Virus record (IMG/VR): IMGVR_UViG_3300005613_000002
Location: 186,001-250,000 of that record
Reading direction: 5' to 3' (one strand)
DNA: 64,000 bases
The notes under the pieces were generated by a model. The model was not told the origin of the DNA. It did not search any database and saw nothing but the letters and a program-made list of their open reading frames with translations. The position numbers and the translations under genes are program-made. Positions 2 to 63,042 of this stretch are shown here, in pieces. Every line of letters begins with the position of its first letter. Position 1 is the stretch's first letter.

Positions 2-265
2 GAAACTTTTCAAATTGAATCAGATAGTGAGTCAAACGGTGAAATTGAGAGTAAAGAATTAATGAATAATATTGTTAAGGCATTTGAAGGATTAAAACCA
101 AAATATCAAAAGGTTGCAAGACTGTTATTTTTGGAACAAAAGAAATATGATGAAATTGCAGAAATTTGTGAAATGCCAATGAATAATGTTAAGGTAACAA
201 TTAACAGGTGCAGAAAAATGTTACAAGCTCAACTACAAAACCAAAAAGTTGAATATTCACTATAA
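2..265 (+). CDS. ECF-subfamily RNA polymerase sigma factor, C-terminal region 4 (5' truncated by window)
   Basis: Frame open from nt 2: ...KELMNNIVKAFEGLKPKYQKVARLLFLEQKKYDEIAEICEMPMNNVKVTINRCRKML fits the sigma70 region 4.2 HTH pattern (L+..L...R.+..L......SY.EIA..+.+...TV...+.RAR..L). Confidence 0.85.
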   Translation, partial: ETFQIESDSESNGEIESKELMNNIVKAFEGLKPKYQKVARLLFLEQKKYDEIAEICEMPMNNVKVTINRCRKMLQAQLQNQKVEYSL

Positions 266-328
266 TACACAAACCTTAAAAAAGAATGTGGGCAATGTCC
301 ATATTCTTTTTTTTTAAAACCTAAAATT

Positions 329-640
329 ATGTTATCAATTCAAGAACATTTACAAAGGGATATTAATAATAATAAAAGTATTGCTTGGTGGGCAAAAGGT
401 TTTTATATTTCAAAAGGTGGTGAACATGGTTTTGATTTAAAGATACCTTTTTTTGCTTTTAATAATAACATTGACGAATTAAAACCAAATGATACAACTA
501 AAGTATTAGTTGATTATTTGGGTTCAATGGTTTGGGTCAATGTACTAGTACATTGGTTGCATTATGGTTATGGTGTTGAAAATTCACCAAGTAAAGAGGG
601 AAAACTTATCAGATACCAATTAGAAAATTTAAAGAATTAA
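329..640 (+). CDS. hypothetical protein
   Basis: Co-oriented ORF; no family recognised. Confidence 0.7.
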   Translation: MLSIQEHLQRDINNNKSIAWWAKGFYISKGGEHGFDLKIPFFAFNNNIDELKPNDTTKVLVDYLGSMVWVNVLVHWLHYGYGVENSPSKEGKLIRYQLENLKN

Positions 641-641
641 A

Positions 642-670
642 TGTAACAATGTTCATTAAAAAACGTATAA
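642..670 (+). promoter_or_regulatory. ECF-type phage promoter
   Basis: TGTAAC-N16-CGTATAA. Confidence 0.85.
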
Positions 671-698
671 TAAGTATAACAATTTAAAACTTACAATA

Positions 699-959
699 AT
701 GGCAAAAGTAACAACAAAAAAAGAAGTTAGACCTTTATATGAGATTGCAAATGACATTGAAAAGGATTGGAAAAATATGTATTTTGGTGCAGTTCCTTAT
801 TTTCAAGCCATGCAAACATTAAATAGTATTGAAGATGACTATATACATGATTCAGCTAAAAGCATTGTACTTTATTTCTTATCCAATGCTGGAACTTGGA
901 AGGGTGAAAAAGCTAGGGAAATCAAAAAGGAATTAAAAAAATTAGCTGGTGTTAAGTAA
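699..959 (+). CDS. conserved phage hypothetical protein
   Basis: RPLYEIA..I.KDW...YFGA.PY..AM...SIV.YFLSNA.TW.G motif recalled from widespread small phage proteins; downstream of promoter. Confidence 0.75.
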   Translation: MAKVTTKKEVRPLYEIANDIEKDWKNMYFGAVPYFQAMQTLNSIEDDYIHDSAKSIVLYFLSNAGTWKGEKAREIKKELKKLAGVK

Positions 960-990
960 GTGTTTCACTAGTTGATTGGAGGGAAACCTT

Positions 991-1024
991 AAAAGGGGGA
1001 AGTATTAATTTACTTTCCCCTTTT
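991..1024 (+). terminator. intrinsic terminator
   Basis: AAAAGGGGGAAGTA-TTAATT-TACTTTCCCCTTTT hairpin. Confidence 0.75.
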
Positions 1025-1071
1025 GCTTTTAAAATAGTGATAGCACAACAATAAAAATAGTAAGTGAACAA

Positions 1072-1100
1072 TGTAACAATAGTGGTCAATGTCCGTATAA
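1072..1100 (+). promoter_or_regulatory. ECF-type phage promoter
   Basis: TGTAAC-N16-CGTATAA; only an 8-codon ORF follows. Confidence 0.8.
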
Positions 1101-1171
1101 TAAGTATGAAATATAAAGTAATGTACAAATAAGATATTAAACTTTTGTTTACTTTTATTGTAAGTGTGTTT

Positions 1172-1210
1172 AAAGGGTGAATCATTTAACCAGAATGACA
1201 CCCTTTTTTT
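1172..1210 (+). terminator. intrinsic terminator abutting next promoter
   Basis: AAAGGGTG..TCATT/AATGA-CACCCTTT stem plus U-tract running into TGTAAC. Confidence 0.7.
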
Positions 1211-1239
1211 TGTAACCTTTTTTAATTAAAAACGTATAA
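1211..1239 (+). promoter_or_regulatory. ECF-type phage promoter
   Basis: TGTAAC-N16-CGTATAA. Confidence 0.85.
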
Positions 1240-1266
1240 TAAGTATAACAATTAAAACATACGACA

Positions 1267-1602
1267 ATGAAAATTTTAACAAAAGAAATCGAAAAAGCAT
1301 TTAAAAAACAGGGTGATACTTCACAATGTTCAATGTCCGAGATTAAGATAGTAATGAAACTTTTTGGTGGTGGTTCATTTACTTGGTATCTATATGAACA
1401 TCTTGAAGGTGATATTTACATGGCATTTGTTAATCTTGGTGATAGTGAAATGGCTGAATGTGGTACTGTATCATTGTCTGAGATACAAGCGATTAAATTC
1501 CCTCCATTTGGTTTAGGTGTTGAAAGAGATATGCACTTCAAACCATTGTCCAGAACATTAAAAGATGTTTATGATACTGTTAAATCTGGTGGTCATGTGT
1601 AA
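1267..1602 (+). CDS. DUF2958-family protein
   Basis: KLFGGGSFTWYLYE...LG..EMAECGTVSLSEI..I..P.GLGVERD.HF pattern. Confidence 0.75.
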   Translation: MKILTKEIEKAFKKQGDTSQCSMSEIKIVMKLFGGGSFTWYLYEHLEGDIYMAFVNLGDSEMAECGTVSLSEIQAIKFPPFGLGVERDMHFKPLSRTLKDVYDTVKSGGHV

Positions 1603-1816
1603 TACAATATATCTTAAAATAGGTAAAAAATATAAAACTAGAAATGGTTTAATTACTGAACCATTAATTAAATCCAATAATGGAACTAGTTATATTTTTG
1701 AATCAAAACTTAATGAGCCAGAATTTAAAAGTCCTTCAGTTAGGGAGTGGTTAAAGAATGGAAAGTTTCTAATTGCTGGACATAATCACAGATTAGATTT
1801 AGTTGAGGAAATATAA
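1595..1816 (+). CDS. hypothetical protein
   Basis: ATG overlapping upstream stop; start moved from 1565. Confidence 0.65.
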   Translation: MCNTIYLKIGKKYKTRNGLITEPLIKSNNGTSYIFESKLNEPEFKSPSVREWLKNGKFLIAGHNHRLDLVEEI

Positions 1817-1841
1817 AGTATTCAATATACAATAATATTAT

Positions 1842-1872
1842 AAAAGGGTTGCACGAAAGTGTAACCTTTTTT
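1842..1872 (+). terminator. intrinsic terminator whose 3' arm is the -35 box
   Basis: GGTTGCAC-GAAA-GTGTAACC-TTTTTT. Confidence 0.8.
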
Positions 1873-1888
1873 AATTAAAAACGTATAA
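1860..1888 (+). promoter_or_regulatory. ECF-type phage promoter
   Basis: TGTAAC-N16-CGTATAA. Confidence 0.85.
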
Positions 1889-1893
1889 TAAGT

Positions 1894-2013
1894 ATGGTAA
1901 CAAAAGAAATAAATAGACCAACGACATTAAAGGAATACAATCAATCATTATTAACTGATGATAAATTGTTGAGTGGTAAAGAATTTCGTAGATTGAAACG
2001 TAAAAGACTTTAA
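1894..2013 (+). CDS. small basic protein, 39 aa, probably leaderless
   Basis: MVTKEINRPTT...FRRLKRKRL; ATG 12 nt after the C of the -10 box. Confidence 0.6.
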   Translation: MVTKEINRPTTLKEYNQSLLTDDKLLSGKEFRRLKRKRL

Positions 2014-2015
2014 TT

Positions 2016-2372
2016 ATGAAAGACACATTAACAGATGAACAGATTAATGATTTAATTGTAACAGCAATTGAAGGTGGTATTAATTATTGGTGTTGGCAAG
2101 TTTCATTAAAAGAAGGAACAATTAAACCAGAACAACAATCAAAACTAAGATATTTATCTGATTGTATTTCCCTTGGTGGTACATTAATATTACATGATGC
2201 TGAAAGTTCTGAATCATGGGAATTAACAAAAGAAAAGTTCTTAAAAGGGATTGAAAAGACTTTAGAATGGGGTGGTAGTGCTAATGTTCAAGATTTATTT
2301 GATAACCACGATGCAGACGTTGCAGACGTTTTAATTCAATTCTCAATATTTGATAAAATAGTCTTTGGATAG
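2016..2372 (+). CDS. conserved phage hypothetical protein
   Basis: TAIEGGINYW...DADVADVLIQ..IF..IVFG motif recalled from phage proteins. Confidence 0.75.
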   Translation: MKDTLTDEQINDLIVTAIEGGINYWCWQVSLKEGTIKPEQQSKLRYLSDCISLGGTLILHDAESSESWELTKEKFLKGIEKTLEWGGSANVQDLFDNHDADVADVLIQFSIFDKIVFG

Positions 2373-2373
2373 T

Positions 2374-2402
2374 TGTAACTATTTTTTATTAAAAACGTAT
2401 AA
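2374..2402 (+). promoter_or_regulatory. ECF-type phage promoter
   Basis: TGTAAC-N16-CGTATAA. Confidence 0.85.
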
Positions 2403-2407
2403 CTATT

Positions 2408-2758
2408 ATGAGCGACAAATTAGATACACAAGAATTTTATGAAGTGATGCAACAGTATCGACATTCAAATGCTAACAATCAGGAACAAGTTGTTAAATCT
2501 TTTGAAAATGTTAAAACTTGGATTCGTGATAATTTTCTTGGTGAAGTTGAAAAGAAAGTTGAGGGTTGCCCAGAATGGTTAACTTCTGATGTTCGTAAAC
2601 TTGTAAAGGAAACATGGGATAGTCATAAGGTTTGTAATGATGGTTTGACCATTAAAGCAATGAGAATAGTTCAAGCAACAGCAAAAGAAGCTGGTTATGA
2701 AATTGGTATTTCCAAAGCAATGGACTTAATGAAAGAATATTGTAATATTTACGATTAA
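2408..2758 (+). CDS. hypothetical protein, probably leaderless
   Basis: ATG 12 nt after the -10 C. Confidence 0.7.
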   Translation: MSDKLDTQEFYEVMQQYRHSNANNQEQVVKSFENVKTWIRDNFLGEVEKKVEGCPEWLTSDVRKLVKETWDSHKVCNDGLTIKAMRIVQATAKEAGYEIGISKAMDLMKEYCNIYD

Positions 2759-2762
2759 AGTC

Positions 2763-2978
2763 ATGGTTAAAACATTAGACAATACAGATAAAAACATTAA
2801 AGACTTAGAAAGTCAGGGTTATGTTAAAAGTAGTGTAAGCAAACCATTTAATTATAATAAGGTATTAAGATATGATACTAAACGTATGGTATACTGGTTT
2901 AGTTCAAGTACTGCTGCACATATGAGTGATTGTTTTTTTACTAGACAAAATGTTGGTACTATAATTATAGGTTTTTAG
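2763..2978 (+). CDS. hypothetical protein
   Basis: Co-oriented ORF. Confidence 0.6.
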   Translation: MVKTLDNTDKNIKDLESQGYVKSSVSKPFNYNKVLRYDTKRMVYWFSSSTAAHMSDCFFTRQNVGTIIIGF

Positions 2979-2979
2979 T

Positions 2980-3008
2980 TGTAACCTTTTTTAATTAAAA
3001 ACGTATAA
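2980..3008 (+). promoter_or_regulatory. ECF-type phage promoter
   Basis: TGTAAC-N16-CGTATAA. Confidence 0.85.
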
Positions 3009-3036
3009 TTATTATAACACACTAAAAGTAAATATC

Positions 3037-3348
3037 ATGGATTTATTTGAAACATTAGGAAAGACATTAAAACCTGTAACAACATTAACTAAAGAATTTA
3101 AGGTTGGGGCAGTATCAGTAAATTCCAATTCATTTGGATTAAAGCAAATGATTATGGTTGCCAAAGATGGAACAGCATTTAAGGCATGTTTTAATTATTT
3201 GAATGTGAAGAAAGAAAAGGAAACTATTAATGCTTCTATAATTTTAAATGAAGATGGAAAAGTAATATCAACTTCATTTGTTGGTGGTGAATTAATTGAA
3301 CAAATCAGTGATGCACCAAAAGAAATAATTGAAGAACTCTGGAATTAA
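3037..3348 (+). CDS. hypothetical protein
   Basis: First gene after promoter. Confidence 0.7.
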   Translation: MDLFETLGKTLKPVTTLTKEFKVGAVSVNSNSFGLKQMIMVAKDGTAFKACFNYLNVKKEKETINASIILNEDGKVISTSFVGGELIEQISDAPKEIIEELWN

Positions 3349-3359
3349 AAATAACAGTA

Positions 3360-3572
3360 ATGGAAATTTTAAAAATAAAACAATTAGAACATAGTGGAAT
3401 AGGTAATAATGCTATTCATATTAAAGTGATTGATAAGTTTAGAAAATCAAAAGAAGATGGATTGAAATATTGTAAACTCAAAGGTTTTGATGTTTCTATA
3501 ACTGATGTTTTATTAACAGTAAAACAAAATGTAATGTATGGGTTTAAAATGTCTGCATTAATTACTAATTAG
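3360..3572 (+). CDS. hypothetical protein
   Basis: Co-oriented ORF. Confidence 0.65.
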   Translation: MEILKIKQLEHSGIGNNAIHIKVIDKFRKSKEDGLKYCKLKGFDVSITDVLLTVKQNVMYGFKMSALITN

Positions 3573-3573
3573 T

Positions 3574-3602
3574 TGTAACTATTTTTAATTAAAAACGTAT
3601 AA
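3574..3602 (+). promoter_or_regulatory. ECF-type phage promoter
   Basis: TGTAAC-N16-CGTATAA. Confidence 0.85.
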
Positions 3603-3626
3603 CTATTATAACTAAAACACAAAGTT

Positions 3627-3944
3627 ATGAAAAAGCAATTAAAAGAAATATTGAATAATTGTCCACTTTCTGCTAAATGGTTAAATATGAGAGAATGGCA
3701 AAAAGAAAAATTCTCTACAGTTTTTGAAATGTGTGAAAATGAAAATATTAAAATTCACAATCGAAATCAAAAAGGTTGTTCAGGATTATTGAAAATATAT
3801 TACGATTATGGACAAATGAGAGTGATTAGATTTTCAAGCATTAGTAATATTGAAGCTGATTTGGTTAATTTGTATGCACAAAAATGTTTATATTTAGGTG
3901 ATAAATTTAAAATAACTCACAGACTTAGGAACTATTCAAATTAA
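3627..3944 (+). CDS. hypothetical protein
   Basis: First gene after promoter. Confidence 0.7.
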   Translation: MKKQLKEILNNCPLSAKWLNMREWQKEKFSTVFEMCENENIKIHNRNQKGCSGLLKIYYDYGQMRVIRFSSISNIEADLVNLYAQKCLYLGDKFKITHRLRNYSN

Positions 3945-3954
3945 AAATATACCA

Positions 3955-4149
3955 ATGAAATCAATAAACGTAAAGAATTTACAAATTCAGTTTGATAGCT
4001 TTGACGAAGGAGCAGACAAACACACGGCATTAAACATGCTTGAAGAAATCAATGGTGCATTACAAGAAAGATTCCCAGAGAACACACCTCAAATTTTTGT
4101 TGGTGCAGTTGATGACGATGACATTGAAATAGCAGATTGTAAAGAATAA
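3955..4149 (+). CDS. small acidic hypothetical protein
   Basis: Co-oriented ORF. Confidence 0.65.
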   Translation: MKSINVKNLQIQFDSFDEGADKHTALNMLEEINGALQERFPENTPQIFVGAVDDDDIEIADCKE

Positions 4150-4154
4150 TCATA

Positions 4155-4310
4155 ATGAGACCATTTAGCACTGATAATTTCAAACATAAAGAAATTCTAA
4201 GGAGTACGACAAAAACAGCAAAATTAGTAGCAAAAAATGCTGATAGGTCGAAAAAGAAAACTGTAAGGAATAGATTAAAAAATGAAATGAATAGGGAATT
4301 GGATAATTAA
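4155..4310 (+). CDS. small basic protein, 51 aa
   Basis: MRPFSTDNFKHKE...; fills the gap, not in ORF track. Confidence 0.55.
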   Translation: MRPFSTDNFKHKEILRSTTKTAKLVAKNADRSKKKTVRNRLKNEMNRELDN

Positions 4311-4331
4311 AATTTGTTACAGTTTTTAATT

Positions 4332-4364
4332 AAAAAGGTTGCATGAAAGTGTAACCTTTTTTTT
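4332..4364 (+). terminator. intrinsic terminator whose 3' arm is the -35 box
   Basis: GGTTGCAT-GAAA-GTGTAACC-TTTTTTTT. Confidence 0.8.
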
Positions 4365-4378
4365 GTTATTACGTATAA
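4350..4378 (+). promoter_or_regulatory. ECF-type phage promoter
   Basis: TGTAAC-N16-CGTATAA; no ORF follows. Confidence 0.8.
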
Positions 4379-4383
4379 TAATT

Positions 4384-4437
4384 AGGCTGGATAATACTAG
4401 GGTGCAGTAATCCACTCCTGCCTGAAAGTCTGACTTT
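4384..4437 (+). ncRNA. candidate small structured RNA
   Basis: GC-rich island starting at predicted +1; nested stems AGGC/GCCT, TGGAT/ATCCA, TACT/AGTA; possible loop pseudoknot AGGG/TCCT. Confidence 0.5.
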
Positions 4438-4481
4438 AGAATCATTCTACATTAATACTATAAATCTTTTTAATTAAAAAC

Positions 4482-4510
4482 TGTAACAAATTTTAATTAG
4501 AAACGTATAA
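4482..4510 (+). promoter_or_regulatory. ECF-type phage promoter
   Basis: TGTAAC-N16-CGTATAA. Confidence 0.85.
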
Positions 4511-4538
4511 TAAGTATAACATTTAAAGATATACTATC

Positions 4539-5429: not shown

Positions 5430-5448
5430 TCTGAGCAATGTACAATAT

Positions 5449-5479
5449 AAAAAAGGTTGCAGAAATGTAACCTTTTTTT
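5449..5479 (+). terminator. intrinsic terminator (same family, no -10 box follows)
   Basis: AAAAAAGGTTGCA-GAAA-TGTAACCTTTTTTT. Confidence 0.8.
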
Positions 5480-5513: not shown

Positions 5514-5542
5514 TGTAACTATTTTTAATTAAAAACGTATAA
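5514..5542 (+). promoter_or_regulatory. ECF-type phage promoter
   Basis: TGTAAC-N16-CGTATAA. Confidence 0.85.
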
Positions 5543-6053: not shown

Positions 6054-6082
6054 TGTAACAATTTTAATTAAAAAACGTATAA
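6054..6082 (+). promoter_or_regulatory. ECF-type phage promoter
   Basis: TGTAAC-N16-CGTATAA. Confidence 0.85.
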
Positions 6083-6577: not shown

Positions 6578-6606
6578 TGTAACTATTTTTAATTAAAAAC
6601 GTATAA
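6578..6606 (+). promoter_or_regulatory. ECF-type phage promoter
   Basis: TGTAAC-N16-CGTATAA. Confidence 0.85.
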
Positions 6607-7147: not shown

Positions 7148-7357
7148 ATGAATAAAGCAATGTACACTGGTGAAGTAACAGTTACCGACCCAGATTCGAA
7201 ATTACCAGTTGAGGTATCAATGTTTAAACATGAAGGTGGTGGAATGTTTGGAATAGATAGTTCATATCTTGACCAAACATTTGAAGATGATATTGAACCA
7301 GTAATACCTGACCCTTTTAATACTGGTAAAGGGTTAATTTTAGAAGGTTTAGTGTAA
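7148..7357 (+). CDS. hypothetical protein
   Basis: Stop TAA lies inside next -35 box. Confidence 0.7.
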   Translation: MNKAMYTGEVTVTDPDSKLPVEVSMFKHEGGGMFGIDSSYLDQTFEDDIEPVIPDPFNTGKGLILEGLV

Positions 7358-7381
7358 CCTTTTTTAATTAAAAACGTATAA
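7353..7381 (+). promoter_or_regulatory. ECF-type phage promoter
   Basis: TGTAAC-N16-CGTATAA. Confidence 0.85.
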
Positions 7382-7409: not shown

Positions 7410-7742
7410 ATGACAAAAAAAGAATTTAAAAAGTTGATTAGTTTTCACAAGTATGGTAATCGTAGGGATTCAAGCATAATTGCAATTTTCTTCGATTATA
7501 ATCAAGGTGAACTTGAAAATGGTGATTATTTCCGTGGTTATAAATTTTGTTTGTTTTCAAGATCAACCAATGCAACCAAAGCAGAATTAATTAATATTGC
7601 ATACGATGCAATTATCAATGAGGTTGAAACACCTTATTACATTCAGCAAATAACTGCTCAGAATGATTCACAACGTTTTAGAGTTCCTATAGTTAGTTCA
7701 GGTTTAAATAAATTAATTAAGTACGAACCTGTAACAAATTAG
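7410..7742 (+). CDS. hypothetical protein
   Basis: First gene after promoter. Confidence 0.7.
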   Translation: MTKKEFKKLISFHKYGNRRDSSIIAIFFDYNQGELENGDYFRGYKFCLFSRSTNATKAELINIAYDAIINEVETPYYIQQITAQNDSQRFRVPIVSSGLNKLIKYEPVTN

Positions 7743-7758
7743 AATAAAAAACGTATAA
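7730..7758 (+). promoter_or_regulatory. ECF-type phage promoter
   Basis: TGTAAC-N16-CGTATAA, -35 inside upstream CDS end. Confidence 0.8.
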
Positions 7759-8431: not shown

Positions 8432-8459
8432 GTAACAATTTTAATTAAAAAACGTATAA
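8431..8459 (+). promoter_or_regulatory. ECF-type phage promoter
   Basis: TGTAAC-N16-CGTATAA. Confidence 0.85.
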
Positions 8460-9751: not shown

Positions 9752-9780
9752 TGTAACAAAATAAAAAATAATACGTATAT
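9752..9780 (+). promoter_or_regulatory. ECF-type phage promoter
   Basis: TGTAAC-N16-CGTATAT. Confidence 0.8.
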
Positions 9781-10781: not shown

Positions 10782-10809
10782 GTAACAATTTTAATTAAAA
10801 AACGTATAA
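10781..10809 (+). promoter_or_regulatory. ECF-type phage promoter
   Basis: TGTAAC-N16-CGTATAA. Confidence 0.85.
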
Positions 10810-10835: not shown

Positions 10836-11237
10836 ATGTTAGTTGAAACAAATAGAAATTATGTTGAAAGAGTTGAGGGAAGTAAACATTTCCTGAATTG
10901 TCCTAAACATATATTAAACCATACGTTAGACTGTTTTTATCGTCAATTTCATGATAATAAAGCAAAAGCAATTGAAGTAATTCATTCTTATTTAAAAGAT
11001 TATAATATTGAAAGTCCGAAACAAAAAGCAATTCAATTTGTTGAATGGCGTAGCTCTATTACTATTCAGGAGTTTAATAATATCAATGTTAATTCTTATG
11101 TTGATAATTCACCTAAACATATCAATGATATGTTAAACCACCAATGTAACTGGATTGAAACTAATACAACTTATTTTCCTTTTACTGGTATAAAAAACAA
11201 ACAACCAAGTTACCCATATAAATTTAGAACGTTGTAA
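10836..11237 (+). CDS. hypothetical protein
   Basis: Stop TAA inside next -35 box. Confidence 0.7.
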   Translation: MLVETNRNYVERVEGSKHFLNCPKHILNHTLDCFYRQFHDNKAKAIEVIHSYLKDYNIESPKQKAIQFVEWRSSITIQEFNNINVNSYVDNSPKHINDMLNHQCNWIETNTTYFPFTGIKNKQPSYPYKFRTL

Positions 11238-11261
11238 CAATTTTAATTAAAAAACGTATAA
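11233..11261 (+). promoter_or_regulatory. ECF-type phage promoter
   Basis: TGTAAC-N16-CGTATAA. Confidence 0.85.
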
Positions 11262-12018: not shown

Positions 12019-12047
12019 TGTAACATATTTAAATTAAAAACGTATAT
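12019..12047 (+). promoter_or_regulatory. ECF-type phage promoter
   Basis: TGTAAC-N16-CGTATAT. Confidence 0.8.
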
Positions 12048-13998: not shown

Positions 13999-14027
13999 AG
14001 TAACATAATTGAGCAATGTACGTATAA
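13999..14027 (+). promoter_or_regulatory. ECF-type phage promoter (AGTAAC variant)
   Basis: AGTAAC-N16-CGTATAA; spacer identical to 14699 promoter. Confidence 0.75.
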
Positions 14028-14698: not shown

Positions 14699-14727
14699 TG
14701 TAACATAATTGAGCAATGTACGTATAA
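14699..14727 (+). promoter_or_regulatory. ECF-type promoter of non-coding RNA cluster
   Basis: TGTAAC-N16-CGTATAA followed by about 400 nt without a credible ORF. Confidence 0.85.
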
Positions 14728-15150: not shown

Positions 15151-15178
15151 GTAACATTATTGAGCAATCTACGTATAA
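15150..15178 (+). promoter_or_regulatory. ECF-type phage promoter
   Basis: TGTAAC-N16-CGTATAA. Confidence 0.85.
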
Positions 15179-16080: not shown

Positions 16081-16108
16081 GTAACATTAATTAAAAATTT
16101 ACGTATAA
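16080..16108 (+). promoter_or_regulatory. ECF-type phage promoter (1 of 3 tandem)
   Basis: TGTAAC-N16-CGTATAA. Confidence 0.8.
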
Positions 16109-16192: not shown

Positions 16193-16221
16193 TGTAACCT
16201 TTTTTAATTAAAAACGTATAA
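16193..16221 (+). promoter_or_regulatory. ECF-type phage promoter (2 of 3 tandem)
   Basis: TGTAAC-N16-CGTATAA. Confidence 0.8.
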
Positions 16222-16267: not shown

Positions 16268-16296
16268 TGTAACATTTATATTTAATATACGTATAT
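16268..16296 (+). promoter_or_regulatory. ECF-type phage promoter (3 of 3 tandem)
   Basis: TGTAAC-N16-CGTATAT. Confidence 0.8.
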
Positions 16297-18666: not shown

Positions 18667-18694
18667 GTAACAAAATTTTAATTAATACGTATAA
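18666..18694 (+). promoter_or_regulatory. ECF-type phage promoter
   Basis: TGTAAC-N16-CGTATAA. Confidence 0.85.
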
Positions 18695-22131: not shown

Positions 22132-22599
22132 ATGATTAAATATATTAAAGGTGATGCAACATCACCAGTAGGAGAAGGAAATAAAGTAATAGCACATATT
22201 TCTAATGATGTTGGTGGTTGGGGTGCAGGTTTCGTATTAGCATTATCCAAGAGGTGGATACAACCTGAAGCACATTATCGTGCTGAAGCTAAAAAACTAA
22301 CCAAAGAGAACCCATACTTAACTCTGGGTGATGTACAGTTTGTACAAGTTGAAAATAATATTGTTGTTGCTAATATGATAGGACAACACCTAACTGTCTC
22401 AAGAACAAAAGAAACCCCAATTAGATATGAAGCAGTTAAAAAATGCTTAGAAGAAGTAAATGAATTCTGTATGTTAAATAACGCAACACTTCATGCACCA
22501 AGATTCGGTTCAGGTTTAGCTGGTGGTGATTGGAATAAGATTGAAGCAATCATTAATTCCACAATGTCCGTTGATGTTACTATATACGATTTTAATTAA
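22132..22599 (+). CDS. macrodomain (Appr-1-p / ADP-ribose processing) protein
   Basis: IKGDAT, IAHISNDVGGWGAGFV.A, PRFGSGLAGGDW. Confidence 0.9.
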   Translation: MIKYIKGDATSPVGEGNKVIAHISNDVGGWGAGFVLALSKRWIQPEAHYRAEAKKLTKENPYLTLGDVQFVQVENNIVVANMIGQHLTVSRTKETPIRYEAVKKCLEEVNEFCMLNNATLHAPRFGSGLAGGDWNKIEAIINSTMSVDVTIYDFN

Positions 22600-22610
22600 A
22601 AAAGGTTACA
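22582..22610 (-). promoter_or_regulatory. ECF-type promoter, antisense to macrodomain gene
   Basis: Minus strand TGTAAC-CTTTTTTAATTAAAAT-CGTATAT. Confidence 0.75.
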
Positions 22611-26362: not shown

Positions 26363-26391
26363 TTATACGTAAAACATTAATAAATGTTACA
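26363..26391 (-). promoter_or_regulatory. ECF-type phage promoter
   Basis: TGTAAC-N16-CGTATAA. Confidence 0.85.
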
Positions 26392-27106: not shown

Positions 27107-27135
27107 TTATACGTAAAAATAGTTATTTTGTTACA
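27107..27135 (-). promoter_or_regulatory. ECF-type phage promoter
   Basis: TGTAAC-N16-CGTATAA. Confidence 0.85.
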
Positions 27136-30867: not shown

Positions 30868-30896
30868 TTATACGTGAATATGTTTTAAATGTTACA
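30868..30896 (-). promoter_or_regulatory. ECF-type phage promoter
   Basis: TGTAAC-N16-CGTATAA. Confidence 0.85.
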
Positions 30897-35561: not shown

Positions 35562-35590
35562 TTATACGTAATTTATTCTCAAATGTTACA
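35562..35590 (-). promoter_or_regulatory. ECF-type phage promoter
   Basis: TGTAAC-N16-CGTATAA. Confidence 0.85.
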
Positions 35591-37187: not shown

Positions 37188-37216
37188 TTATACGTAATTA
37201 TCATTATTTTGTTACA
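37188..37216 (-). promoter_or_regulatory. ECF-type phage promoter
   Basis: TGTAAC-N16-CGTATAA. Confidence 0.85.
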
Positions 37217-38621: not shown

Positions 38622-38650
38622 TTATACGAAATTAAAGATAAAATGTTACA
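38622..38650 (-). promoter_or_regulatory. ECF-type phage promoter
   Basis: TGTAAC-N16-CGTATAA. Confidence 0.85.
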
Positions 38651-39025: not shown

Positions 39026-39031
39026 ATTTTG

Positions 39032-39238
39032 TCAACCCAACGGGGTTCGAACCAAACGTGACCTCCTGCATGTTAATACCGCCAATCTATTTCCGATTTC
39101 ATCCAAATTTCATGATATTAGCTTTATATCAATTCATATATTTTACTTTCTTATTTCCACCTTTAGTACCCCATTATCCGTAAACCGCTAAATAAACATT
39201 TAATTAGGACAGGCACTCTACCACTGAGCTATGGGTTG
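39032..39238 (-). tRNA. tRNA-like gene split by about 132 extra nt in the anticodon loop; identity unresolved
   Basis: Acceptor CAACCCA/TGGGTTG + A; TA-GCTC-AGTGGTA-GAGT D-arm; anticodon stem CCTGT/GCAGG; AGGTC; T-arm ACG(TTT)GG-TTCGAAC-CCCGT. Confidence 0.75.
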
Positions 39239-39497: not shown

Positions 39498-39526
39498 TTA
39501 TACGTTAGAAATAAAAAAATGTTACA
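39498..39526 (-). promoter_or_regulatory. ECF-type promoter of ncRNA/tRNA-like locus
   Basis: TGTAAC-N16-CGTATAA, preceded by a weak hairpin and T7. Confidence 0.85.
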
Positions 39527-42376: not shown

Positions 42377-42405
42377 TTATACGTGTGTATTATTTTTTTG
42401 TTACA
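42377..42405 (-). promoter_or_regulatory. ECF-type phage promoter
   Basis: TGTAAC-N16-CGTATAA. Confidence 0.85.
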
Positions 42406-46116: not shown

Positions 46117-46145
46117 TTATACGAATACTAATAAAAAATGTTACA
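46117..46145 (-). promoter_or_regulatory. ECF-type phage promoter
   Basis: TGTAAC-N16-CGTATAA. Confidence 0.85.
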
Positions 46146-47942: not shown

Positions 47943-47971
47943 TTATACGAAGATTATTATTTTTTGTTACA
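47943..47971 (-). promoter_or_regulatory. ECF-type phage promoter
   Basis: TGTAAC-N16-CGTATAA. Confidence 0.85.
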
Positions 47972-50291: not shown

Positions 50292-50320
50292 TTATACGTA
50301 TATTTTAAAATAATGTTACA
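50292..50320 (-). promoter_or_regulatory. ECF-type phage promoter
   Basis: TGTAAC-N16-CGTATAA. Confidence 0.85.
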
Positions 50321-51296: not shown

Positions 51297-51325
51297 TTAT
51301 ACGTAATGATGAATATTTTGTTACA
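51297..51325 (-). promoter_or_regulatory. ECF-type phage promoter
   Basis: TGTAAC-N16-CGTATAA. Confidence 0.85.
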
Positions 51326-54182: not shown

Positions 54183-54211
54183 TTATACGAATATAATAGC
54201 TTTTTGTTACA
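54183..54211 (-). promoter_or_regulatory. ECF-type phage promoter
   Basis: TGTAAC-N16-CGTATAA. Confidence 0.85.
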
Positions 54212-56240: not shown

Positions 56241-56269
56241 TTATACGTGGTATCTAATAAAATGTTACA
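56241..56269 (-). promoter_or_regulatory. ECF-type phage promoter
   Basis: TGTAAC-N16-CGTATAA. Confidence 0.85.
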
Positions 56270-59048: not shown

Positions 59049-59077
59049 TTATACGTAAGATTTTATCTTTTGTTACA
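59049..59077 (-). promoter_or_regulatory. ECF-type phage promoter
   Basis: TGTAAC-N16-CGTATAA. Confidence 0.85.
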
Positions 59078-60896: not shown

Positions 60897-61200
60897 TTAA
60901 CCAATTAAGTGAATTACATTCTACATAACTATCGCTACTTAATGCAGAATAACCTTTTATTTTGAACATTCCTTCACATTTAACACTTCTAAATATTGAC
61001 TCCAGTTCTGGTGAATTATAAACATTTTTGTTTACATTTTTTATAAACTCGTCTTTATCAACATCAGAAACTTCATGAACTACATCAAAAAGTTTATTTA
61101 CATCAATCACATTTTGTGTGATAGGAGTAAATCCGTTAAAACTTACACTAACTGTAAATTTCTTGCAAAGTTCTTTTAATTTTTCAATATTAATTTTCAT
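60880..61200 (-). CDS. hypothetical protein
   Basis: Co-oriented ORF. Confidence 0.65.
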   Translation of the reverse strand: MKINIEKLKELCKKFTVSVSFNGFTPITQNVIDVNKLFDVVHEVSDVDKDEFIKNVNKNVYNSPELESIFRSVKCEGMFKIKGYSALSSDSYVECNSLNWLNDESR

Positions 61201-61400
61201 TATAGTTTAATTTTAATATGTTTCCTAACGTTTTTCAAACACACAACATCAACTTCAACAGCATGACCCCAAATTTCATTATCAGCATATGTACATAACC
61301 AATGTTTAGTATGTAATTTTAAATCATCAATTAGTGTACTTTCTAATTCTTTAAGTTTTTCTAATGATAGTTTCTCAAGTGTCTTATTATCGTAAATCAT
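61200..61400 (-). CDS. hypothetical protein
   Basis: First gene after promoter. Confidence 0.65.
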   Translation of the reverse strand: MIYDNKTLEKLSLEKLKELESTLIDDLKLHTKHWLCTYADNEIWGHAVEVDVVCLKNVRKHIKIKL

Positions 61401-61416
61401 TATTATTGTTTATTAC

Positions 61417-61445
61417 TTATACGTTGAATTTAAAATTTTGTTACA
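61417..61445 (-). promoter_or_regulatory. ECF-type phage promoter
   Basis: TGTAAC-N16-CGTATAA. Confidence 0.85.
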
Positions 61446-61833
61446 ATATTTTAACAATAGATTTTTGAAAGCTATCTAAAGTATGAAATTGGATGTTATG
61501 ACCAAACAAATTAGTACTGATAAATTTTAAAGAATTTTTATAAAAAACACCAGATTGTTTATACATTTTAAACTTTTTTTGTGACCCAAGAAACTGTGGT
61601 GTTTCAATAACACAGTTAATAACATCAACATTAGGTATATTTGTAATTTTCTTTTTTGTGGTTTTAGTAAAAATCTTTTTAATTAAAAATTTGAAACCAA
61701 CTTCTTTCTGAGCAGATTCCATTAAGTTTAACACTTGATTAAATGATAACAATTGAGCAGATTCACCCCAATTTTTAACCAAACCTAAGTGTTGTTCATT
61801 TATGATGTCTTTATTTGTTTTCATTTTATTCAA
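61441..61833 (-). CDS. hypothetical protein
   Basis: Stop TAA inside -35 box. Confidence 0.65.
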   Translation of the reverse strand: MNKMKTNKDIINEQHLGLVKNWGESAQLLSFNQVLNLMESAQKEVGFKFLIKKIFTKTTKKKITNIPNVDVINCVIETPQFLGSQKKFKMYKQSGVFYKNSLKFISTNLFGHNIQFHTLDSFQKSIVKIL

Positions 61834-62029
61834 TTTCTGATAAACGATTAGTCATTGTGTCCCATTCTGAAAGATTGTCAGGAGTTTTTATCCTACAAAA
61901 TAGTTTCCCATATATTCCAACTAATACAATTTTAAAACCACCACGATGATTTTTATCTAAGATATAAGATTTACCAACAGTAAGCTTTATACCTTTATTT
62001 GTTATAATTTCAGTTATTGAATTAATCAT
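61826..62029 (-). CDS. hypothetical protein
   Basis: Start moved from 62059. Confidence 0.6.
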   Translation of the reverse strand: MINSITEIITNKGIKLTVGKSYILDKNHRGGFKIVLVGIYGKLFCRIKTPDNLSEWDTMTNRLSEIE

Positions 62030-62348
62030 CGTCAAAGAGTATTGTGTTGTTACCAACAATTTTAATTGCTTTTAATATTTTCTCTTGGTTATCATATAGA
62101 ATTTTCATTCTATATTCATTACTATTAAATTCAGCAAGACTTAATTGTGTTAATTGAATATTGTTAAGTTCTTCTAGTGACTTAATAGTTTTGTTTGCTT
62201 CATTATCTTCCCTTTGTAATTCTTCCAATACTGTTACAGCAGCAAACATAGTCGCAAAACTACCATCTTCATGACGAATTTCAAATGGACTTTCACATTC
62301 AATTATCCAACCATTTCTTTCTAATAATTTAATTTCTTTTTTATCCAT
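62022..62348 (-). CDS. hypothetical protein
   Basis: GW.IECESPFEIRHEDGSFAT..AA motif. Confidence 0.7.
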   Translation of the reverse strand: MDKKEIKLLERNGWIIECESPFEIRHEDGSFATMFAAVTVLEELQREDNEANKTIKSLEELNNIQLTQLSLAEFNSNEYRMKILYDNQEKILKAIKIVGNNTILFDDD

Positions 62349-62349
62349 G

Positions 62350-62571
62350 CTATTTTATTTTTTCATTTAATATCTTAATTTCATTTTCAAAAAAATCATT
62401 ATCAACACCTCGTTTAACATCATTAATGTAAATATAAAGAGATATTGCTACAACCCAAATAACATTCAATTCAGTTAACCAGAATAATATAGAAAACGGA
62501 AAAATTAATGAAGTTATGTGCCAAATTAAATTAAAACCTAAATGTTTTATCTTCTTTTTATTGTTTCTCAT
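62350..62571 (-). CDS. two-TM small membrane protein
   Basis: Hydrophobic helices. Confidence 0.65.
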   Translation of the reverse strand: MRNNKKKIKHLGFNLIWHITSLIFPFSILFWLTELNVIWVVAISLYIYINDVKRGVDNDFFENEIKILNEKIK

Positions 62572-62608
62572 GATTTTATTATTTTAATCAAGATATGATT
62601 TTACATCA

Positions 62609-62995
62609 TTATAATTTATCTAAGTCAAATCTTTTATTTCCTTCATCATCAGTAACTTTGGTACATGCAATAAGACCACAAAGTGTATGGATTGCACGTT
62701 CAATTGGTAATTCAGAATCGTTTGATAATCTTTTTTGGAAGGTAGATGAAAAAACATCTTTAATTTGTTGAAAGTTCCCACTGAAATCTTCTTTAATTTT
62801 CAAATGAACATCAAGAAGTTTATAGAAAATCACTTGTAGATATTGTTGGTAGTTTTCATCAGGATTCACTCCATATACTTCAAAATACCAAGGTTTAATT
62901 GTGTTTTCCCATTTACCTGTTAAAGGATATTTATCAGTTAAATGTCCTTTACAAAGTAAAATCAATTGTTTATCATATTTATCCAGTTTAATCAT
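62609..62995 (-). CDS. hypothetical protein
   Basis: First gene after promoter. Confidence 0.75.
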   Translation of the reverse strand: MIKLDKYDKQLILLCKGHLTDKYPLTGKWENTIKPWYFEVYGVNPDENYQQYLQVIFYKLLDVHLKIKEDFSGNFQQIKDVFSSTFQKRLSNDSELPIERAIHTLCGLIACTKVTDDEGNKRFDLDKL

Positions 62996-63013
62996 AATAT
63001 TGTTTTTTATTGA

Positions 63014-63042
63014 TTATACGTAGATTAATTATTTTTGTTACA
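63014..63042 (-). promoter_or_regulatory. ECF-type phage promoter
   Basis: TGTAAC-N16-CGTATAA. Confidence 0.85.

What the first reader, a model, noticed from the sequence alone, without database searches (positions are those of the whole stretch)
2..63042. Phage ECF sigma factor sitting at the head of a 44-promoter ECF-style regulon
Seen: 44 copies of GTAAC-N16-CGTATA with no spacing variation (26 on + in 0.6-18.7 kb, 18 on -), nearly all at gene 5' ends. The window opens in a sigma region-4 ORF. Known: an AAC-type -35 with a CGT-type -10 is the hallmark of ECF promoters (B. subtilis SigW TGAAAC-N16-CGTA, SigX TGTAAC...CGAC), unlike the Bacteroidota primary-sigma TAnnTTTG promoter. Inference: the phage redirects host RNAP with its own ECF sigma to express well over 100 accessory genes and its ncRNAs; a hijacked host ECF is the alternative.
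Basis: partly seen in the sequence, partly recalled or inferred. Interest (0 to 1): 0.75.

Follow-up and report, generated by a model that had tools for sequence, protein, structure and literature searches.

The report
Jumbo phage ECF sigma promoter regulon
An uncultured 322-kb T4-like phage, probably of a Bacteroidota host, carries 58 near-identical promoter-like sites of the type read by stress (ECF) sigma factors; it encodes two such sigmas, and one sits next to the sites, so it probably redirects the host RNA polymerase to about 200 small accessory genes.

Summary
GTAAC-N16-CGTATA occurs 44 times in the window (26 on +, 18 on -; 0.02 expected). It occurs 58 times in the whole 321,624-bp phage genome, only with a 16-nt spacer and with almost no one-mismatch variants. 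57 of 58 sites point the same way as the local genes, and 47 lie within 70 nt upstream of an ATG-started ORF.

The ORF at the window start is a complete 188-aa ECF sigma ("sigma-1": regions 2 and 4.2, TIGR02937 E 7e-30). Its closest solved homologue is B. subtilis SigW, whose promoters have a near-identical consensus. No phage RNA polymerase was found.

The sigma gene followed by an array of the same motif recurs in diverged relatives (35-79% identity), in three cases directly and more loosely in a fourth.

- A second phage ECF sigma (26% identical) lies outside the window.
- A second promoter-like class, aGTATTTATa, precedes structural genes.
- Host-type TAnnTTTG promoters precede replication genes and sigma-2.

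Sigma-1 heads only the + strand array and has no such promoter of its own.

The pairing of sigma-1 with the motif is inferred, not shown; no RNA data were available. This is a new member of a known kind (phage-encoded sigma take-over), of moderate interest.

The parts
1..265 (+). 3' part of the sigma-1 gene. The full gene is genome 185699-186265 (L010:10699-11265), 188 aa. The window holds the region 4.2 part.
   Evidence: Sigma70_r2 plus Sigma70_r4_2; TIGR02937 103.8 bits against a cut-off of 42.9; best PDB match SigW (5wuq).
329..640 (+). 103-aa ORF lying between sigma-1 and the first motif site, so probably co-transcribed with sigma-1. It is found in only one relative (L021).
   Evidence: no family match, and no anti-sigma domain.
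643..669 (+). Class I promoter-like site. The ATG of the 86-aa phrog_13953 gene lies 29 nt downstream; this gene sits just downstream of sigma-1 in L019, L021, G001 and G002.
699..959 (+). 86-aa gene (phrog_13953, function unknown), conserved just downstream of sigma-1 in four relatives.
1073..1099 (+). Class I site with no ORF downstream. It is followed by a ~105-nt unit that ends in a hairpin and T-run (1106-1211).
   Evidence: (z -2.8).
1212..1238 (+). Class I site directly after a terminator-like hairpin; drives the DUF2958 gene at 1267-1602.
1861..1887 (+). Class I site whose GTAAC lies in the 3' arm of a hairpin.
2375..2401 (+). Class I site; ATG 6 nt downstream, so probably leaderless.
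2981..3007 (+). Class I site.
3575..3601 (+). Class I site.
4351..4377 (+). Class I site overlapping a hairpin, with no ORF downstream (orphan).
4483..4509 (+). Class I site before the DUF932 gene at 4539-5429.
5515..5541 (+). Class I site.
6055..6081 (+). Class I site.
6579..6605 (+). Class I site.
7354..7380 (+). Class I site.
7731..7757 (+). Class I site.
8432..8458 (+). Class I site directly after the terminator-like hairpin at 8397-8427.
9753..9779 (+). Class I site.
10782..10808 (+). Class I site directly after the hairpin at 10747-10776.
11234..11260 (+). Class I site.
12020..12046 (+). Class I site before the GP88-family gene.
14000..14026 (+). Class I site.
14700..14726 (+). Class I site with only a short ORF downstream (orphan).
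15151..15177 (+). Class I site after a hairpin; ATG 28 nt downstream.
16081..16107 (+). Class I site after the hairpin at 16046-16074; orphan.
16194..16220 (+). Class I site; orphan, 75 nt upstream of the next site.
16269..16295 (+). Class I site before the 774-aa gene.
18667..18693 (+). Class I site after a hairpin, before the 398-aa gene.
22583..22609 (-). Class I site pointing antisense into the + strand gene 22132-22599, where the two arrays converge.
26364..26390 (-). Class I site; the next ORF is 111 nt downstream.
27108..27134 (-). Class I site.
30869..30895 (-). Class I site.
35563..35589 (-). Class I site; ATG 7 nt downstream, so probably leaderless.
37189..37215 (-). Class I site; ATG 7 nt downstream.
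38623..38649 (-). Class I site; ATG 7 nt downstream.
39499..39525 (-). Class I site with no ORF downstream; lies upstream of the intron-containing tRNA-like gene.
39031..39238 (-). tRNA-like gene with a 132-nt insertion in the anticodon loop, about 260 nt downstream of the site at 39499-39525.
   Evidence: aragorn with intron search. It was missed by the default tRNA scan and by Rfam.
42378..42404 (-). Class I site.
46118..46144 (-). Class I site; ATG 7 nt downstream.
47944..47970 (-). Class I site.
50293..50319 (-). Class I site.
51298..51324 (-). Class I site; ATG 7 nt downstream.
54184..54210 (-). Class I site.
56242..56268 (-). Class I site.
59050..59076 (-). Class I site; ATG 8 nt downstream.
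61418..61444 (-). Class I site.
63015..63041 (-). Class I site.

Best explanation
The window is part of a complete 321.6-kb T4-like jumbo phage genome from a metagenome. The host is probably a member of the Bacteroidota.

Proposed mechanism: the phage has no RNA polymerase of its own and encodes two ECF-type sigma factors. Sigma-1, whose 3' end opens the window, binds host core RNA polymerase. It directs the polymerase to 58 near-invariant promoters, tTGTAAC-N16-CGTATAa ('class I'). These drive two convergent arrays of about 220 small, mostly unknown accessory genes, a few tRNA or tRNA-like genes, and possibly some short RNAs.

Many + strand promoters sit directly behind, or overlap, a terminator hairpin. 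Genes there are therefore packaged as insulated terminator-promoter-gene cassettes. Ten promoters sit 6-8 nt from the ATG, so they should give leaderless mRNAs.

Sigma-1 itself is made from a different, unique promoter, so the class I genes are a step that follows sigma-1 synthesis. Replication genes and sigma-2 use host-type TAnnTTTG promoters. Structural genes use a third element, aGTATTTATa, which I provisionally assign to sigma-2.

Shown here: the motif statistics, the domain content of both sigmas, the conserved gene order, and the absence of detectable polymerase genes.

Inferred: that the sites fire, that sigma-1 rather than sigma-2 or a host factor reads them, and the timing.
For: - Motif: 44 sites in the window and 58 in the genome against 0.02 expected, one spacer length only, and almost no one-mismatch variants.
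- Position: the sites lie in the 9% of the genome that is non-coding. 57 of 58 are co-oriented with the local genes, and 47 of 58 have an ATG-started ORF within 70 nt.
- Sigma-1: a complete ECF sigma. Its best solved homologue is B. subtilis SigW over the full length, at 72.9 bits. CGTA -10 elements and tGAAACnTTTt -35 elements are the SigW signature (PMC5758882).
- Sigma-2: it matches SigW at only 30 bits. In the region 4.2 helix it has TVSNKVNYIK where the sigma-1 clade and the G004 ECF sigma keep VKxxxxRxR/K.
- Conserved gene order: sigma-1 orthologues at 72-79% identity (L017-L022), 49% (G001) and 35% (G002) are each followed by arrays of the exact motif. G001 has 44 sites and L021 has 8 sites in 4.7 kb. 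These relatives have 33-35% GC against 27.5% here.
- G004: it has a single ECF sigma, no sigma-2 orthologue, and about 30 sites of the form tGaAAC/GTAAC-N16-CGTATAA.
- No polymerase: no beta, beta-prime or T7-type polymerase domains were found.
- Host-type promoters exist elsewhere in the genome, and Shine-Dalgarno cores are avoided.
- Bacteroidia genomes: among 301 searched, the motif occurs about once per genome and no more often than its reversed control.
Against: - No transcription data of any kind were available. No RNA runs were listed.
- The G004 ECF sigma is not inside the sigma-1 clade. It shows that an ECF sigma goes with this motif type, but not which clade.
- The relatives were found by searching for the motif itself, which biases the co-occurrence evidence. 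The exception is L017-L022, which were found through the protein.
- The host is unknown, so a host ECF sigma with the same specificity cannot be excluded. Three of 301 Bacteroidia genomes do show raised motif counts.
- The sites also score 10 of 12 against the TTGACA-N17-TATAAT consensus.
- Sigma-1 lacks two features common in bacterial ECF systems: autoregulation and an adjacent anti-sigma factor.
Confidence: 0.68

Rival explanations
1. The class I sites are real ECF-type promoters but are read by the phage's other ECF sigma (sigma-2, genome 294176-294742). Sigma-1 would then read something else.
For: Sigma-2 is also a full ECF sigma, with TIGR02937 at 2e-22 and both regions 2 and 4. It sits behind a host-type promoter, so it could be made early. 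G003 has a sigma-2 orthologue and 22 class I sites but no sigma-1 in the fragment.
Against: - Sigma-2 lies about 20 kb from the nearest class I site (275788).
- Its region 4.2 helix lacks the basic residues kept by SigW, sigma-E and the sigma-1 clade.
- G004, G001 and G002 have class I arrays without a detectable sigma-2 orthologue, although G001 and G002 are fragments.
- The G003 array runs to the contig end, which is where a sigma-1 gene would be expected.
Confidence: 0.1
2. The phage hijacks a host ECF sigma, for example one induced by envelope stress on infection, to fire the class I promoters. The phage sigmas serve other promoters.
For: The AAC/CGT type is generic for many bacterial ECF groups (PMC5758882). 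Three of 301 Bacteroidia genomes show raised counts of the exact motif: G062 16 against 6, G285 11 against 1, and G222 8 against 2. The host is unknown.
Against: - Most of the Bacteroidia genomes searched show no excess of the motif.
- The sigma-1 gene is physically tied to the arrays in every lineage where the junction is visible.
- Dependence on a host stress sigma would leave sigma-1 without any candidate promoter class, because only two phage-specific classes were found for two phage sigmas.
Confidence: 0.09
3. The sites are strong promoters for the host primary sigma (GTAACA-N17-TATAAT resembles TTGACA-N17-TATAAT). The phage sigma is unrelated to them.
For: The generic sigma-70 scan scores many of the sites 10 of 12.
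Against: - The invariant bases (the C of GTAAC and the CG of CGTATA) are not the ones a primary sigma selects. The TTG of the -35 is absent.
- There is no spacing variation at all.
- Host signals point to Bacteroidota, whose primary sigma uses TTG/TAnnTTTG. These signals are a T9SS CHU_C domain, no Shine-Dalgarno use, and TAnnTTTG before replication genes and a tRNA.
Confidence: 0.04
4. The repeats are not promoters. They would be binding or recombination sites, for example for cassette shuffling or for a DNA-binding regulator, that happen to lie between genes.
For: Several + strand copies share identical 50-nt stretches, including the spacer and leader. This would suit homologous recombination, as proposed for T4 PeSLs (PMC2839356).
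Against: - On the - strand only the two ECF-like boxes are conserved, and the spacers differ.
- The strict orientation with genes and the sharp ATG distance peaks at 6-8 and 27-29 nt fit transcription starts.
- The two roles are not exclusive: PeSLs are promoters too.
Confidence: 0.04

Closest known systems
B. subtilis SigW (ECF01) and its promoters, tGAAACnTTTt-N-CGTAta
   Same: The sigma has the same two-domain ECF architecture, and SigW is sigma-1's best solved homologue. The promoter has the same AAC -35, CGTA(TA) -10 and 16-nt spacer, and often a T-tract next to the -35 (PMC5758882).
   Different: - Sigma-1 scores far below the SigW equivalog cut-offs (100.9 against 209 bits; 88 against 243 bits), so it is not a SigW orthologue.
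- The -35 is GTAAC, not GAAAC.
- There is no anti-sigma partner and no autoregulatory promoter.
- It is encoded by a phage, and its regulon consists of phage genes.
Phage phiEco32 gp36 (a phage-encoded sigma that reads phage middle and late promoters)
   Same: A phage-encoded sigma replaces the host sigma on the host core polymerase to read phage-specific promoters (PMC12276001).
   Different: - gp36 promoters have a single element, AATGTA centred at -11.5, and no -35 (PMC12276001). Here there is a strict two-box promoter.
- gp36 serves middle and late genes. Here the motif serves the accessory-gene arrays, and structural genes use another motif.
- No gp79-like partner was identified here.
T4 PeSL cassettes (composite terminator and early promoter units in the hyperplastic regions of T4-like phages)
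   Same: This is also a T4-like myovirus (T4-type portal and large terminase). It has long runs of small unknown ORFs, many preceded by a hairpin with a T-run followed directly by a promoter. About 11 of 58 sites, mostly on the + strand, have this form. Neighbouring cassettes share near-identical sequence (PMC2839356, PMC4122927).
   Different: PeSL promoters are early promoters thought to be read by the host primary sigma (from my own knowledge of T4). Here the promoter is ECF-type and presumably needs a phage sigma. Most - strand sites have no hairpin.
Sigma cascades of B. subtilis phage SPO1 (gp28, then gp33/34) and T4 gp55
   Same: Temporal classes are set by successive sigma factors on the host core polymerase. 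This genome has three promoter-like classes and two phage sigmas.
   Different: The sigmas here are canonical ECF-type proteins. No T4 gp55 homologue was found by sequence (a weak test). The order of the classes is not known.
ECF-type sigma genes annotated in crAss-like and Lak-type huge phages
   Same: These are the nearest phage homologues, at about 30% identity, in phages thought to infect Bacteroidota. They are annotated 'sigma-W factor'.
   Different: My literature searches found no promoter regulon described for them. They are only distantly related to sigma-1.

Membership tests
ECF (group IV) sigma-70 family sigma factor: sigma-1 | Sigma region 2 (sigma-2 domain) present | tested here: met
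   Pfam Sigma70_r2, E 2.2e-17, residues 19-86.
ECF (group IV) sigma-70 family sigma factor: sigma-1 | Sigma region 4.2 (sigma-4 domain) present | tested here: met
   Pfam Sigma70_r4_2, E 1.1e-8, residues 124-175.
ECF (group IV) sigma-70 family sigma factor: sigma-1 | No region 1.1 and no region 3; small size (about 190 aa) | tested here: met
   The protein is 188 aa, with a 37-aa linker between the two domains and no r1 or r3 match. By contrast, the 279-aa G004 sigma hits r1.2, r2, r3 and r4.
ECF (group IV) sigma-70 family sigma factor: sigma-1 | Passes the curated ECF model | tested here: met
   TIGR02937 sigma70-ECF, 103.8 bits against a cut-off of 42.9.
ECF (group IV) sigma-70 family sigma factor: sigma-1 | Binds core RNA polymerase and directs initiation at a cognate promoter | not testable with these tools
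   No RNA data were listed. The complex prediction with DNA was not folded by the tool and gives no evidence.
Typical bacterial ECF module (common, not strictly defining) | Co-transcribed anti-sigma factor | tested here: not met
   The neighbouring 103-aa, 86-aa and 194-aa proteins match no anti-sigma family in Pfam, NCBIfam or PHROGs. The 103-aa ORF is absent from most relatives.
Typical bacterial ECF module (common, not strictly defining) | Autoregulation: the cognate promoter lies upstream of the sigma gene itself | tested here: not met
   No class I site lies in the 477-nt region upstream of sigma-1. A different block, conserved in four relatives and unique in this genome, sits there instead.
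SigW equivalog (NF007223 / TIGR02948) | Score above the equivalog cut-off | tested here: not met
   100.9 bits against 209, and 88 bits against 243.1. Sigma-1 resembles SigW but is not an orthologue.
ECF-type promoter | -35 element containing AAC | tested here: met
   GTAAC is invariant in all 58 sites. It relaxes to tGaAAC, GGAAC or GTAAC in G004.
ECF-type promoter | -10 element beginning CGT | tested here: met
   CGTATA is invariant in all 58 sites, and CGTATAA is kept in all relatives.
ECF-type promoter | Narrow spacer length and close adherence to consensus | tested here: met
   Only N16 occurs, apart from one N17 site. One-mismatch relaxation adds 0-2 sites.
ECF-type promoter | Transcription starts a few nt downstream of the -10 element | not testable with these tools
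   There is only indirect support: ATG start codons pile up 6-8 nt after CGTATA at 10 sites and 27-29 nt after it at 14 sites.
T4 PeSL-type terminator-promoter cassette | Stem-loop with a T-run immediately followed by, or overlapping, a promoter, repeated between small ORFs | tested here: met
   About 11 of 58 sites have this form, 9 of them in the + strand array. The remaining sites lack the hairpin.
T4 PeSL-type terminator-promoter cassette | The promoter is a host primary-sigma early promoter | tested here: not met
   The boxes are ECF-type, not the host Bacteroidota TTG/TAnnTTTG type.

The most novel reading that the evidence does not exclude
A clade of uncultured T4-like jumbo phages of Bacteroidota runs its whole hyperplastic accessory genome (about 220 genes here) on a private, orthogonal transcription channel. 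A phage ECF sigma reads strictly invariant two-box promoters built into terminator-promoter cassettes, many giving leaderless mRNAs. A second phage ECF sigma, with a remodelled region 4.2, reads the -10-only late promoters. That would make a three-tier cascade with two virus-encoded ECF sigmas and no virus polymerase.
Probability: 0.45. Interest if true: 0.6.

Novelty: new member of a known kind. Interest (0 to 1): 0.5.

Why it matters
Phage-encoded sigma factors that retarget the host polymerase are textbook (SPO1, T4 gp55, phiEco32 gp36). Worked examples come from phages of Proteobacteria and Firmicutes, and my literature searches found no regulon mapped for the ECF-type sigmas annotated in crAss-like and huge phages.

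This case offers three things:
- A clean, testable pair: one small sigma and 58 near-identical two-box promoters, in a lineage whose likely host has an unusual primary promoter.
- A way to read gene-expression classes in uncultured jumbo phages from sequence alone: host-type TAnnTTTG, class I, and the aGTATTTATa class.
- A likely orthogonal sigma-promoter part for Bacteroidota genetics.

It also suggests that the terminator-promoter cassette architecture seen in T4 hyperplastic regions can be rebuilt around a virus-encoded sigma.

Tried and rejected
- RNA evidence: two searches for sequencing runs gave one sediment DNA run holding 5% of the words and no RNA run. Read laying was therefore not used and no start sites could be mapped.
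- Complex prediction of sigma-1 with promoter DNA: the tool did not fold it and says it must not be used as evidence. That used the only job.
- megablast of 20 kb against the phage collection: no match.
- Single-protein scan of IMG/VR with sigma-1: no relatives. Relatives came instead from the protein database and from a DNA-pattern scan.
- Rfam on the window: nothing. Folding of four orphan downstream units gave only one better than shuffles, mostly because of its terminator.
- T4 gp55 against the genome: nothing, but with no positive control this is weak.
- Host identification through the peptide deformylase gene: hits were mostly a short SEC-C motif and were uninformative. They served only to obtain Bacteroidota genome handles.
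- Atlas look-ups of the conserved 86-aa and 194-aa neighbours: phage-only clusters with no function.
- Sigma-1's own upstream element considered as a class II site or a host TAnnTTTG site: rejected. ATATTTAT is not enriched in non-coding DNA, and the element is unique in the genome.
- Genome-wide TAG recoding by the CTA-anticodon tRNA: rejected. TAG ends 44 of 532 called genes, and read-through extends only two of them substantially.
- G004 considered as a clean natural experiment for the sigma-1 pairing: downgraded, because its ECF sigma falls outside the sigma-1 clade.

Full report
**What the window is**

The window is bases 186,001-250,000 of a single 321,624-bp contig with 27.5% G+C. The collection classes it as a virus record with direct terminal repeats and 100% estimated completeness.

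The large proteins show what kind of phage it is:
- A T4-type portal (Portal_T4, 1e-61), a T4-type large terminase, a tail sheath, a family B DNA polymerase, DnaB-like and SNF2 helicases, and an M23 peptidase tail protein.
- Proteins with a type IX secretion CHU_C domain and Fib_succ_major domains.

The nearest cultured phages are distant. The portal is 38% identical to that of a Microcystis phage and 35% to that of Flavobacterium phage immuto.

A Bacteroidota host is likely but not proven. The evidence is:
- The CHU_C domain.
- Avoidance of Shine-Dalgarno cores: 2.4% of genes have one within 20 nt of the start, against a 5% background.
- TTG-N~19-TAnnTTTG elements in front of the SNF2 gene, upstream of the DnaB region, before a tRNA, and before the primase operon.

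**The observation**

GTAAC-N16-CGTATA occurs 44 times in the window, 26 on + at 643-18693 and 18 on - at 22583-63041. Shuffles gave 0.02 expected and never more than 1.

In the whole genome there are 58 sites, 33 on + and 25 on -. Fifty of them lie between 186.6 and 274 kb. Only a 16-nt spacer occurs, apart from one site with 17. Freeing any single one of the eleven fixed bases adds 0-2 sites, so the two boxes are essentially invariant. The extended consensus is tTGTAACa-N15-CGTATAa.

My simple gene caller found 532 genes covering 91% of the genome. Almost all sites lie in the non-coding 9%, and 57 of 58 are co-oriented with the local gene block. 47 of 58 sites (36 of 44 in the window) have an ATG-started ORF of at least 30 aa beginning within 70 nt downstream.

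The distance from CGTATA to the ATG is sharply peaked. Ten sites have 6-8 nt and fourteen have 27-29 nt. If initiation occurs 5-8 nt after the -10 box, as is usual for sigma-70-family promoters (my own knowledge), the first group gives leaderless or nearly leaderless mRNAs.

**The sigma ORF**

The frame ending at window 265 begins at genome 185,699 and encodes 188 aa. Its matches are:
- Sigma70_r2 (2e-17) and Sigma70_r4_2 (1e-8), with no region 1 or region 3.
- The ECF superfamily model at 103.8 bits against a cut-off of 42.9.
- Below cut-off for every equivalog, SigW included.

The best solved homologue is B. subtilis SigW, aligned over residues 14-180 at 72.9 bits. According to PMC5758882, a CGTA -10 element marks SigW promoters, ECF promoters share an AAC -35 element, and many have a T-tract just after it (tGAAACnTTTt). 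The phage motif has all three features. The T-tract is clear in the + strand array and in the relatives.

1. There is a second ECF sigma ("sigma-2") at genome 294,176-294,742 on the - strand. It is 188 aa, 26% identical to sigma-1, and scores 2e-22 against TIGR02937. It lies next to a primase-like gene and an Hsp20 gene. A host-type element, TTG-N19-TATATTTG, lies 6 nt before the primase ATG.

2. There is a second phage-specific upstream element, aGTATTTATa. About 70 of its 92 copies are non-coding, and it has no -35 partner. It lies 15-35 nt before the portal, terminase, sheath and other genes. It is spread over 0-183 kb and 262-321 kb and is absent from 184-261 kb.

3. No RNA polymerase beta, beta-prime or T7-type domains were found. 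The T7-type search had no positive control.

The genome therefore shows three promoter-like classes, two phage sigmas and no detectable phage polymerase.

**Which factor reads the GTAAC/CGTATA class?**

Five lines of evidence favour sigma-1.

*Conserved gene order.* Sigma-1 orthologues at 61-79% identity occur on short metagenome contigs. Three were fetched (72-79% identical), and the exact motif starts right after the sigma gene in each of them. L021 has 8 copies in 4.7 kb.

A pattern scan of IMG/VR found further records with many copies:
- G001 is a 102-kb fragment with 44 copies. Its 49%-identical sigma-1 orthologue sits at the head of the - strand array.
- G002 has 15 copies and two 35%-identical sigma-1-like genes at the start of the dense array.
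- G003 has 22 copies running to the contig end.
- G005 has 21 copies.
- G004 is 291 kb with 9 exact copies.

These records have 33-35% G+C against 27.5% here, so the boxes have been held constant while the rest of the sequence diverged.

Around sigma-1 the gene order is a divergent 194-aa gene, then sigma-1, then an 86-aa phrog_13953 gene. L019, G001 and G002 keep all three; L017 keeps the 194-aa gene and L021 the 86-aa gene (each contig ends before the other).

*Similarity to SigW.* Sigma-1 scores 72.9 bits against SigW and sigma-2 scores 30 bits.

*The region 4.2 recognition helix.* The sigma-1 clade and the G004 ECF sigma keep the VKxxxxRxR/K pattern also seen in SigW. The sigma-2 clade has TVSNKVNYIK. 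From my recollection of the sigma-E/-35 DNA structure, these basic residues contact the -35 element. This would fit sigma-2 serving the class that has no -35 box. It is a lead, not a test.

*G004.* This record is 91% complete. It has one ECF sigma plus a group-3 sigma and no sigma-2 orthologue. It keeps about 30 sites with CGTATAA and a looser tGaAAC/GTAAC/GGAAC -35 box at the same spacing. In the tree, however, the G004 sigma sits on its own long branch outside the sigma-1 clade. It supports an ECF sigma reading this motif type, rather than sigma-1 specifically.

*Bacteroidia genomes.* Among 301 genomes searched, the exact motif occurs about once per genome and no more often than its reversed control. 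The exceptions are G062, G285 and G222. A large host regulon of this exact form is therefore not general. The true host is unknown.

Together these make sigma-1 the best candidate, at roughly two in three. None of this is a functional test.

**How sigma-1 itself is expressed**

There is no class I or class II site in the 477 nt upstream of sigma-1. Instead, a block conserved in four relatives lies about 85 nt before the ATG: ATTTTTAtTTAAAAAAAGTgTAAtATTTATTTGGTgGTgT. It is unique in this genome.

The block has a 39-nt, 77%-complementary inverted copy in front of the divergent 194-aa gene. The two genes therefore seem to share a mirrored control region, which also holds two 41-nt tandem repeats.

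Unlike most bacterial ECF sigmas, sigma-1 is thus not autoregulated, and no anti-sigma domain was found in its neighbours. In G002, by contrast, the second sigma copy lies inside the array, downstream of a class I site.

**Architecture of the regulon**

The + strand array runs from 186.6 to 204.7 kb, with 46 called genes to the end of the + gene block at 209.6 kb. It has a site every 0.1-2.4 kb. Many copies share an almost identical 50-nt unit:

GTAACCTTTTTTAATTAAAAACGTATAATAAGTATAACAATTTAAAAC

About 11 of the 58 sites, nine of them in this array, directly follow or overlap a strong hairpin with a T-run. In some of these the GTAAC box lies in the 3' arm of the stem. This is the same design as the composite terminator and early-promoter cassettes (PeSLs) of T4-like phages, which are thought to promote modular gene shuffling (PMC2839356, PMC4122927). 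Here it is built around an ECF-type promoter.

The - strand array runs from 273.6 down to 208.6 kb and holds 175 called genes. Its sites are 0.7-13 kb apart (mostly 1-4 kb) with varied spacers, and it contains most of the leaderless cases.

The median gene in the two arrays is 93 aa, and 170 of these genes lie in the window. Few have any family match. Those that do are DUF932, GP88, a radical SAM protein, a peptide deformylase with a SEC-C motif, an AAA ATPase and DUF2958.

**The 'ncRNA' claim**

There are eight orphan sites in the window.
- The site at 39499-39525 (-) is followed, about 260 nt downstream, by a tRNA-like gene with a 132-nt insertion in the anticodon loop. It is found only when aragorn is run with intron search.
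- Outside the window, the site at genome 129,604 lies 121 nt before a tRNA-Ala gene.
- The unit after the site at 1073 folds better than shuffles (z -2.8), but mainly through its terminator.
- The other orphans show no signal, and Rfam finds nothing in the window.
- The site at 22583-22609 (-) points antisense into a + strand gene.

**Comparison with what is known, and verdict**

A phage-encoded sigma that takes over the host core polymerase is a known strategy. For phiEco32 gp36, the promoters have only a -10-like AATGTA element (PMC12276001). ECF-type sigmas are annotated in crAss-like and Lak-type phages, but my searches found no described regulon for them.

This case is a new member of that kind. 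Its distinguishing features are:
- A canonical, strictly invariant two-box ECF promoter.
- Use of that promoter for the accessory-gene arrays rather than the late genes.
- A second ECF sigma in the same genome.
- A cassette architecture parallel to T4 PeSLs.

The mechanism is well supported in silico but has not been demonstrated.

Noticed in passing
Outside the window: genome 294176-294742 (-), L016:1201-1767: A second phage ECF sigma (188 aa, 26% identical to sigma-1). It lies next to a primase-like gene and an Hsp20 gene. A Bacteroidota-type TTG-N19-TATATTTG element lies 6 nt before the primase ATG.
   Followed up: yes
Genome 0-183 kb and 262-321 kb, for example 112334 (-) before the portal gene and 114449 (-) before the terminase gene: A second phage-specific upstream element, aGTATTTATa. 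About 70 of its 92 copies are non-coding, and it has no -35 box. It precedes structural genes and is absent from 184-261 kb, so it is probably a late promoter class. It is also enriched in G001, G003 and G005.
   Followed up: partly
L007 and L008 (genome 122.5-159.7 kb): A tRNA island with 45 predicted tRNA genes, a tmRNA, and a tRNA with anticodon CTA (amber suppressor type) at about genome 159544. The suppressor tRNA lies just downstream of the class I site at 159187.
   Followed up: partly
Genome 11340-11912 (-) and 253988-254371 (-): Two TAG-terminated genes whose frames stay open for 283 and 152 further codons. Read-through by the CTA-anticodon tRNA is possible. There is no genome-wide TAG recoding: TAG ends 44 of 532 called genes.
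   Followed up: partly
Window 39031-39238 (-): A tRNA-like gene with a 132-nt insertion in the anticodon loop. aragorn calls it Val(aac), which is uncertain. The default tRNA scan and Rfam both missed it.
   Followed up: partly
L010:10263-10301 and 10625-10663; L010:10353-10434: The divergent control region between the 194-aa gene and sigma-1 holds a 39-nt inverted repeat (77% complementary), so both genes have a mirrored upstream block. Between the arms are two 41-nt tandem repeats, which may be operator- or iteron-like.
   Followed up: partly
Window 22583-22609 (-): A class I cassette in inverted orientation, where the two arrays converge. It points antisense into the + strand gene at 22132-22599.
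   Followed up: no
L001:12433-17862 (-): A 1810-aa protein that combines a poly(A) polymerase/CCA-adding head domain, 2H-phosphoesterase/RNA ligase-like domains and a weak Acb1-like match. It may be an RNA repair or anti-defence giant protein.
   Followed up: no
L002:5928-8750 (-): An SNF2-family helicase gene with a LAGLIDADG domain inserted within the helicase domain. This may be an intein or a homing endonuclease insertion.
   Followed up: no
G004 (L162-L176), for example 58368, 67619, 69271 and 74785 (-): In the 291-kb relative, many CGTATAA sites carry an upstream CCCTCTTT block and a CTTTATATATT stretch. This genome has a group-3 sigma (L176:9767-10603) in place of sigma-2.
   Followed up: partly
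Bacteroidia genomes G062, G285 and G222: Three of 301 genomes carry 8-16 exact copies of GTAAC-N16-CGTATA against 1-6 for the reversed control. The cause could be a host ECF regulon of the same specificity or a resident related phage.
   Followed up: no
Window 34783-35367 (-) and 36172-36882 (-): The accessory arrays include a peptide deformylase fused to a SEC-C zinc motif and a radical SAM protein.
   Followed up: no
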